From Takakia lepidozioides (lineage: Eukaryota; Plantae; Bryophyta), in NCBI GenBank assembly GCA_030704615.1, contig CM060732.1, forward strand, positions 78,678,001 through 78,742,000: a stretch of 64,000 bases of DNA. The letters are read 5' to 3'. Positions 31,952 through 33,489 of this stretch are shown here, in pieces (the first letter of the stretch is position 1; each line of letters opens with the position of its first letter). The translations under genes were made by a program, and so were the position numbers. The notes under the pieces are model-generated. The model had not been told where the DNA came from, made no database searches, and was given only the letters and a program-made list of their open reading frames with translations.

Positions 31952-33489
31952 CTCTCTAGGTTGGATTCGAACCAACGACCCAATGGATAGAGTAATCTTT
32001 TTGGAAGGATAAGTAATGGGCGGCCTTGGTGTTAGGCGAAGAAGGCTTCAATAATCATACAAGATACTTGATGAAAGCAAGTCATACATACATTGCGTTC
32101 ATGTATAACATCGCAGTTATTGAGTCAGACCCACCATCATGATATAATCCTTCAAAACGCTCCCCTCCGAACCGTGCTTGCAAGATCTCCAAGCACACGG
32201 CTCTTGCTCGGTATTCGAAACTAGCATAATTGAACAAATATGATAGATGGTCTTTATCAGCCAGATTCAACGAAAAAATTTTTTTTTTTTCTGCTTCTAT
32301 GAAGACCAAGTTCATACCATGACTGCATAATAATGGTTAAAACACTGATTCCCTTCCAATTCATTGTACTATGGAAACTCTGACGCCATTGCTGATGGTT
32401 CCGACACTGAGAGCACCAGGCCGCGGAGTGCAGCATATATATATATTTTTTTCCGACCCGCCCCCGCTTTGCGGGAACTCTAGGCCCGGATTTACCCACT
32501 TTGTTCCCATAGCTCATTCCCGAATGAGAGGCCGAAGGAGGAGGAAAAATATAAATAATTAAAGCTCTCTTCCTTAGGGAAAGGGGGCTTTTGGAGAAGA
32601 AGCAAGTCCGGGGTTTTGCGGTTTAGGGGCCTTCAGTGCTTAATTAAGCCTGCCAGGGAGGGCGTTCCTGAATCATCCGAGGAGGTCCTCACTTAGGATC
32701 GCTTTAGGTTTAAGTTATTTTTAGTGCTATGGACGAAGCCGCAGGTCAAGCAATCGAATGTAGCAAGTTCATCCGCCTACGCGCATAGCTTGATAGCTAC
32801 AAGCGAGCTAAACACAATGCATCCTGCATCTCGTGGAGAAATCCATGATGAGTGCTTGGCACGACTGCATCTGTTCCACATGATCAGTATGACTCTCCTG
32901 TTAACCGTGAAAAGCATATGTAAGAAACAGAGCCTACAAAGGCTTTGGTTATTTGCTTCAAGTATAATCAACCTCTTGGAAACCCGATCTATCTAGGTGC
33001 AAACAGCCAAACCAATACCATGCTTGCAAGGGAGATTCAAAGTAGCAGATTCTGCAACTTGTTGATCATTCAGGTTTTAGTGGAAAAACCACTTGGCTTT
33101 CATTCAGTTATGCAATAACATAGTAATTAAATGCTACGCCATGGATCTACGTAGATCCAAGGTTCGGGATTGAACACTACGCGCGCCTTGAAAGAGATGA
33201 AAAATCCACACATTGTATGCTCGATAGCTCGACCATGCCGTGCTTACATGGATAGGAGTCAAAAAAACCCAAATGACTTGCGTTTAACCATAAGGTTTAT
33301 CCATATGAGGCCTAACTTAGACATAGTCTATAACATCATGCTACGTTTCCTAAATTCGTTTCCAAATGAAGGTAAGGTATTTTTTTAGACATGCTCTGAA
33401 CGATGCCACAGTAAAAAGCTAAATCCTGTACCAATATATTCAGCGCACTTAACAGCCGCCATTTGCTCTAACCGCTGAGCCACTAGAGA
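31952..33489 (-). tRNA. trnN: tRNA-Asn(GUU) split by a group II intron; exons 33449-33489 and 31952-31986
   Basis: TCTCTAGTGGCTCAGCGGTTAGAGCAAATGG(CGG)CTGTTAA | CCATTGGGTCGTTGGTTCGAATCCAACCTAGAGAG; acceptor, D, anticodon and T stems pair; 3 extra nt before the anticodon loop. Confidence 0.9.
31987..33448 (-). other. Group II intron in the trnN anticodon loop (after position 38)
   Basis: GTGCG at 33448; domain V GAGCCGTGTGCTTGGAGATCTTGCAAGCACGGTTC (32169-32203); ends ttActctAT. Confidence 0.9.

What the first reader, a model, noticed from the sequence alone, without database searches (positions are those of the whole stretch)
31952..33489. Cryptic trnN(GUU) split by a 1.46-kb group II intron in a moss-type mitogenome
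Seen: two tRNA halves that join into a full cloverleaf, separated after anticodon-loop position 38 by an intron with GTGCG, canonical domain V, a long domain VI and an A(-7)...AT end; weak maturase traces near 32780-32970; located downstream of nad6. Established (from memory, verify): model mosses lack mitochondrial trnN, liverwort trnN is intronless and linked to nad6, and a trnN group II intron is known in Charales. Inference: a charophyte-era intron retained in an early-diverging moss and easily missed by tRNA scanners. A 3-nt GGC duplication before the loop may be decay or error.
Basis: partly seen in the sequence, partly recalled or inferred. Interest (0 to 1): 0.85.

Follow-up and report, generated by a model that had tools for sequence, protein, structure and literature searches.

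The report
Fossil intron-split tRNA gene in Takakia
The moss Takakia keeps an unusually well-preserved but probably dead mitochondrial asparagine-tRNA gene split by an ancient algal intron; this relic was already described in other mosses in 2023.

Summary
In detail: minus-strand trnN(GUU), exon 1 at 33489-33449, a 1462-nt group II intron after position 38, exon 2 at 31986-31952. The organism is Takakia lepidozioides. The intron is orthologous to the Charales one and is the known trnN-GUUi38g2, reported as pseudogenized in mosses, hornworts and Phlegmariurus (PMC10012718, supplement). I found it at the same nad6-cox2 position in Sphagnum, Andreaea, Polytrichaceae and (5' half only) Hypnales, each with its own lesions. 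The GGC duplication is not an error: two accurate DNA data sets carry it. It turns the anticodon loop into 10 nt. Across four mosses the exons change at the spacer rate (20 changes observed, 19.9 expected), while neighbouring working tRNAs barely change (3 in 4x219 nt). No spliced product appears in two RNA assemblies, a weak test. The 'maturase traces' are domain I, not an ORF. Best reading: a slowly decaying pseudogene; Takakia has the most intact copy seen. The window copy sits beside nuclear DNA and has window-only indels. The scan noted the same gene on another piece (s1-470103).

The parts
33449..33489 (-). trnN(GUU) 5' exon, tRNA positions 1-38 plus 3 extra nt; A9G is private to Takakia
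33455..33460 (-). GGC-GGC tandem duplication (3 extra nt) at the base of the anticodon stem; gives a 10-nt loop; present in organellar DNA contigs, absent from the other mosses, Charales and Marchantia examined
31987..33448 (-). group II intron trnN-GUUi38g2, 1462 nt here (1465 in the accurate contig), no ORF; IIA-like by YAY end and delta-delta' (subgroup inferred)
32898..32905 (-). EBS1 (UUAACAG, 7/7 complementary to the end of exon 1) preceded by delta G, which can pair with the first C of exon 2; identical in Charales, altered in Andreaea, Sphagnum and Hypnales, deleted in Polytrichaceae
32340..32390 (-). Charales-conserved block taken as the domain III core (assignment inferred from position)
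32169..32203 (-). domain V, 35 nt, AGC triad, GNRA-type loop, intact
31987..32168 (-). domain VI, 182 nt (expanded in all mosses examined), bulged branch A at 31993
31952..31986 (-). trnN(GUU) 3' exon, positions 39-73, perfect T arm and acceptor strand
34248..34852 (-). nad6 upstream (approximate ends), 760 nt before trnN; transcribed and C-to-U edited; its two frameshifts here are window-only

Best explanation
An ancestral streptophyte mitochondrial trnN(GUU) gene, with its ORF-less cis-spliced group II intron after A38, inherited vertically in the nad6-trnN-cox2 block and now a pseudogene in Takakia. Shown: structure, orthology, the real 3-nt duplication, and neutral-rate change of exons and intron core across mosses. 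Inferred: selection on the gene was lost early in moss evolution, with tRNA-Asn supplied from the cytosol as is assumed for mosses lacking the gene. Takakia's slowly changing mtDNA has gathered only two exon events (A9G and a slippage duplication that makes a 10-nt anticodon loop), so it still looks nearly intact. The intron may still be spliceable, but the product would not decode normally.
For: Published as pseudogenized in mosses, hornworts and Phlegmariurus. Each moss has different private lesions. Private exon changes in four mosses: 20 observed against 19.9 expected from flanking sequence. Working trnE/trnR/trnG show 3 changes in 4x219 nt (Fisher p 5e-10); Takakia vs Andreaea differ by 5 events in 73 nt of trnN and 0 in 219 nt of controls (p 0.0009). 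The Charales-conserved intron core is not slower than the rest in Takakia (p 0.42-0.45). Similar Takakia-only 3-6-nt insertions lie in the intron and spacers. The duplication is in a British Columbia sample and in a second DNA study. RNA contigs cover nad6 and its trailer but show no near-identical intron cover and no exon-exon joint.
Against: On the Takakia branch alone the test is underpowered (2 events in 73 nt vs 0 in 219; p 0.06). All splice determinants checked (5' end, EBS1, delta, D5, branch A, 3' end) are intact, unlike in the other mosses. No lesion is shared by all mosses, so the reconstructed moss ancestor is a perfect tRNA. mRNA-type assemblies lose small RNAs, so the missing joint proves little. 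I could not check the rest of the mitogenome for a second trnN.
Confidence: 0.75

Rival explanations
1. No longer a decoding tRNA but kept as a tRNA-like processing element (t-element): acceptor, D and T arms fold, before or after splicing, and PRORP/RNase P cuts at 33489 to make the nad6 mRNA 3' end. The anticodon arm is free to decay.
For: The Takakia lesion and the main Andreaea lesion (C39G) are both in the anticodon arm. PRORP needs the acceptor stem and D/T loops but not the anticodon arm, and cuts a t-element in Arabidopsis nad6 transcripts (PMC3858429). RNA contigs run down the nad6 trailer to 33542 and 33581 and stop just short of trnN.
Against: Sphagnum and Polytrichaceae have lesions in the D, T and acceptor arms, and Hypnales lost exon 2, so the role is dispensable in mosses. 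The pooled exon rate is neutral. Contigs cannot show RNA ends, and a repeat near 33500-33520 can also break assemblies.
Confidence: 0.14
2. Still a working tRNA-Asn, the only one known from a moss mitochondrion: the intron is spliced and the duplication is absorbed by a register shift in which C-to-U editing at window 33458 repairs a C-A mismatch and restores the 7-nt GUU loop, the 3 extra nt moving to the D/anticodon hinge.
For: Splice signals and three arms are perfect. The shifted stem goes from +2.1 to -1.9 kcal/mol with that one edit, close to the canonical -2.0. Takakia edits heavily (51 C-vs-T sites in 2446 columns; edited nad6 in RNA). The duplication is shared by the samples examined.
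Against: A 4-nt hinge is not a standard tRNA geometry (own knowledge). The two RNA contigs with U at 33458 also lack 2-3 neighbouring bases, are unspliced or unresolved, and at least one continues into unrelated sequence on both sides, so they look like diverged nuclear copies and not edited precursors. No joint seen. Neutral rates elsewhere in mosses.
Confidence: 0.08
3. The duplication or the whole locus is an artefact of an error-prone or nuclear (NUMT) copy.
For: The window begins with nuclear Gypsy/PPR DNA and differs from the accurate contig by 31 indel events and 4 substitutions in 13.2 kb, with frameshifts in nad6 and atp6.
Against: The accurate organellar contigs (SRR15431198 and run X3) carry the same locus with the same duplication.
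Confidence: 0.01
4. Independent intron gain at the same site, not inheritance from charophytes.
For: Unrelated-looking mobile group II introns occupy the same tRNA-Asn site in soil contigs, so the site is a repeated target. Liverworts lack the intron.
Against: Nine collinear sequence blocks are shared with the Charales intron (47 differences in 273 core positions), in the same gene context.
Confidence: 0.02

Closest known systems
trnN-GUUi38g2 (Zumkeller & Knoop 2023, PMC10012718, suppl. file 2 and Fig. S3N; trnN(guu)_37 of Turmel et al. 2013, PMC3814193)
   Same: Same host gene, same site after A38, homologous sequence, same nad6-cox2 context; stated to be pseudogenized in mosses, hornworts and Phlegmariurus.
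   Different: Takakia is not mentioned in that paper's text or held supplements. Its copy is full length with intact EBS1, D5, D6 and three perfect arms, whereas the figure shows only 5' remnants (Physcomitrium, Phlegmariurus). The intron is 1465 nt against 605-644 nt in Charales.
trnS-GCUi43g2 pseudogenes of mosses, hornworts and lycophytes (PMC10012718)
   Same: Algal intron-containing mitochondrial tRNA gene that decayed independently in several land-plant lines and persists as a spacer fossil.
   Different: Different gene and intron family; liverworts keep that intron but lost the trnN one.
Marchantia polymorpha mitochondrial trnN(GUU)
   Same: Exons differ at only 3 positions; downstream of nad6.
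   Different: Intronless, with a normal 7-nt loop.
Plant mitochondrial t-elements cut by PRORP1 (PMC3858429)
   Same: tRNA-like structure behind nad6 with an expendable anticodon arm.
   Different: No cleavage shown here; no evidence of common descent; this element is split by an intron.

Membership tests
Group II intron | 5' GUGYG and 3' AY ends | tested here: met
   GUGCG ... CUCUAU
Group II intron | Domain V with AGC triad; domain VI with bulged A at -7 | tested here: met
   RF00029 46.5 bits; folds
Group II intron | EBS1-IBS1 pairing with the 5' exon | tested here: met
   7/7 complementarity at 32904-32898, conserved in Charales
Group II intron | Splices in vivo | tested here: inconclusive
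   No joint in two RNA assemblies, which do not cover small RNAs well
Mobile, maturase-encoding group II intron | RT/X ORF in domain IV | tested here: not met
   tblastn E >= 0.66, Pfam blank, domain IV about 135 nt
trnN-GUUi38g2 | Insertion after position 38 of mitochondrial trnN(GUU) | tested here: met
   same junction as Nitella in Fig. S3N
trnN-GUUi38g2 | Sequence homology and synteny with the Charales intron | tested here: met
   HSPs E 2e-20 to 7e-8; nad6-trnN-cox2 order in L029 and L043
Functional tRNA-Asn gene | Acceptor, D and T arms and invariant bases | tested here: met
   no mismatches, no broken invariants
Functional tRNA-Asn gene | 5-bp anticodon stem with a 7-nt loop | tested here: not met
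   10-nt loop is the preferred unedited fold; bulged forms cost +3.8 to +4.5 kcal/mol
Functional tRNA-Asn gene | Purifying selection like neighbouring tRNAs | tested here: not met
   pooled mosses p 5e-10 against controls; Takakia branch alone p 0.06, inconclusive
Functional tRNA-Asn gene | Mature, CCA-tailed, charged tRNA | not testable with these tools
   needs tRNA-seq or acid northern
t-element | RNase P/Z cleavage defines the neighbouring mRNA end | not testable with these tools
   contigs cannot show RNA ends

The most novel reading that the evidence does not exclude
Takakia alone among the mosses examined still splices this intron and makes a working mitochondrial tRNA-Asn, with the 3-nt duplication neutralised by a register shift plus C-to-U editing at window 33458; or, more weakly, uses the split tRNA shell as the nad6 3'-end processing signal.
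Probability: 0.1. Interest if true: 0.65.

Novelty: new member of a known kind. Interest (0 to 1): 0.25.

Why it matters
Modest. It adds the best-preserved land-plant copy of trnN-GUUi38g2 that I could find, and a graded decay series (Takakia and Andreaea, then Polytrichaceae and Sphagnum, then Hypnales). The series shows that the moss ancestor had a structurally perfect intron-split trnN, which fits the published picture of intron loss in liverworts and gene decay elsewhere. It is also an annotation warning: scanners miss the gene or call it tRNA-Arg. It would matter more only if the tRNA proved to be spliced and charged, which would show an edited rescue of an insertion in an anticodon arm.

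Tried and rejected
Maturase remnant in the intron: tblastn with nine RT/maturase queries and Pfam were negative. Sequencing-error origin of the duplication: rejected. Alternative 3' end at 32119 suggested by the Rfam alignment: rejected; the domain VI basal helix closes at 31987 and the Charales and other moss ends agree. Editing at 33458 in RNA contigs: considered, but those contigs carry extra indels and unrelated flanks. Paper search for 'i38g2' in main texts was blank; the statement is only in supplements. No Takakia mitogenome annotation paper was found in the library, so whether a GenBank record annotates the locus is unknown. The Nitellopsis nad2 look-up gave no contig; the Sphagnum balticum locus L031 had no trnN. 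The IQ-TREE run printed nothing; the FastTree placement (support 0.77) is weak, and the species call rests on the SRA record. Hornwort, lycophyte and Zygnematophyceae loci were not fetched.

Full report
Observation. On the minus strand the window holds a tRNA-Asn 5' half (33489-33449), 1462 nt that begin GUGCG and end A(-7)...UAU (33448-31987), and a 3' half (31986-31952). Rfam finds domains V/VI (46.5 bits). With the 3 extra nt set aside, the halves give a perfect cloverleaf that differs from Marchantia trnN at 3 positions. EBS1 is fully complementary to the last 7 nt of exon 1 and is preceded by a G that can pair with the first C of exon 2. D5 is intact, and D6 is 182 nt long with a closed basal helix.

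Organism and context. From about 9.2 kb on, the window is moss-type mtDNA (nad9, cob, nad1, cox3, cox2, trnN, nad6, atp6, rps7, rps12, trnE/R/G, nad2, nad4, nad5, rrn26), preceded by Gypsy and PPR sequence. The window's rps12 product occurs exactly in a 13.2-kb contig of SRR15431198, which PMC9021317 lists as Takakia lepidozioides from British Columbia. That contig is 99.6% identical to window 29582-42799. The differences are 4 substitutions and 31 indel events, mostly single bases missing from homopolymers in the window, and they account for the nad6 and atp6 frameshifts. A second DNA run (X3) agrees with the contig. The window copy is therefore an error-rich or nuclear-inserted copy. The accurate contig also gives 1465 nt. 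I cannot separate a recent NUMT from a mis-join, and it does not affect the finding.

The duplication is real. It is present in the SRR15431198 contig and in X3 and absent from the other mosses, Charales and Marchantia. Unedited, the arm prefers a 10-nt loop (-1.5 kcal/mol); forms that keep a 7-nt loop by bulging cost +3.8 to +4.5. Takakia has several other private 3-6-nt insertions in the intron and spacers, so slippage is the ordinary explanation.

Relatives. A pattern scan of metagenomes and protein look-ups gave the same locus in Polytrichaceae (L003, L020-L027; nad6 identical to Atrichum), Andreaea (L018; nad6 identical to A. rothii/wangiana), Sphagnum (L037-L039), Hypnales (L032-L036), Charales (L029, L043) and Marchantia (L047). 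Charales have an intact gene with a 605-644-nt intron at the same site, sharing nine collinear blocks with Takakia. Marchantia has the intronless gene. Andreaea has C39G, an acceptor mismatch and EBS1/D5-D6 linker changes. Polytrichaceae have U8G, three stem mismatches and a deletion of EBS1. Sphagnum has six broken invariants and a truncated D5. Hypnales keep only the 5' half.

Selection. Private changes in the exons of four mosses number 20 against 19.9 expected from flanking DNA. Working trnE, trnR and trnG show 3 in four times 219 nt (p 5e-10). The Charales-conserved intron core is not slower than the rest in any moss. For Takakia alone the numbers are small (2 events vs 0; p 0.06), so its intactness is compatible with slow neutral decay but does not exclude function.

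RNA. Two runs guessed to be RNA cover nad6 (one with many C-to-U changes) and its trailer down to 33542-33581, with no near-identical cover of the intron and no exon-exon joint. Short diverged pieces matching exon 1 or exon 2 lie in unrelated flanks; one exon-1 piece is 3 nt shorter than the window, as if it predates the duplication. These are probably nuclear fragments or co-occurring organisms (inference). Contig data cannot show small RNAs or RNA ends.

Prior knowledge. Turmel et al. 2013 list the trnN(guu) group II site as shared among charophyte groups. [quoted passage not shown] Takakia is not mentioned there. The finding is thus a new, unusually complete instance of a described fossil.

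Mechanism and verdict. Most likely (0.75) a pseudogene, with tRNA-Asn imported from the cytosol (import is inferred, not tested). Less likely a PRORP-cut processing element for nad6 (0.14; one search gives the precedent), or a working tRNA rescued by a register shift and one C-to-U edit that restores a -1.9 kcal/mol stem (0.08). Interest 0.25.

Noticed in passing
L005, L007, L008, L009, L012, L014, L016, L017 (JGI contigs, 1.2-2.8 kb): A bacterial-type tRNA-Asn(GUU) (genome-encoded CCA in L007) is split at the same site, after A38, by group II introns. L007/L016 hold a complete 1160-nt intron (RF00029 57.6 bits in L007); L009 encodes a 632-aa RT-maturase-HNH protein, and the copies are related to each other by tblastx. 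No DNA similarity to the plant intron, no GTDB genome with it, host unknown, and no paper found in one search. A possible tRNA-Asn-homing mobile intron family worth its own look.
   Followed up: partly
L004, L011, L015, L049-L051: tRNA-Asn genes with short inserts starting GTGCG at the same site (about 40 nt in L004, L011, L015, L050, L051); the three GTDB hits are DPANN archaea (Aenigm-, Pace-, Woesearchaeota), so probably archaeal-type tRNA introns.
   Followed up: no
L013:1-1314: Another intron-containing trnN(GUU) next to a nad6-like gene on the opposite strand, GC 33%; probably an algal or protist mitochondrion; only 453 nt of intron held.
   Followed up: no
window 1-9200: Nuclear DNA (Gypsy pol/gag, PLS-class PPR fragments) abuts mtDNA; ORF 8834-9310 fuses a maturase-like piece to gag-like sequence, marking the junction near 9150.
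   Followed up: partly
window 29300-29627: A 330-nt copy of the rrn26 3' end (95% identical to 59917-60243) in the trnN-cox2 spacer; the Polytrichaceae alignment skips this stretch.
   Followed up: partly
window 28454-29210: Spacer sequence homologous (70-72%) to the ORF-bearing region between trnN and cox2 in Charales, also similar to the cox2 intron region at 24546-24839: a second ancient intron-derived fossil kept in mosses.
   Followed up: partly
window 29766-29870: Short matches to domain V/VI regions of other introns in the window (18899-18939, 36837-36880, 45055-45087), consistent with an intron fossil noted earlier as s1-451914.
   Followed up: partly
window 31698-31705 and 29917-29919: An 8-nt and a 3-nt insertion found in the window but not in the accurate contig (the 8-nt one also absent in X3).
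   Followed up: partly
L037 (Sphagnum) nad2 and nad4: Called as uninterrupted 489-aa and 495-aa ORFs, whereas the window has group II introns in both genes.
   Followed up: no
window trnE 39938-40010 and trnR 40560-40633: Takakia shares three derived bases with Andreaea, Polytrichaceae and Hypnales where Sphagnum keeps the Marchantia/Charales state; a small signal on the branching order of basal mosses.
   Followed up: no
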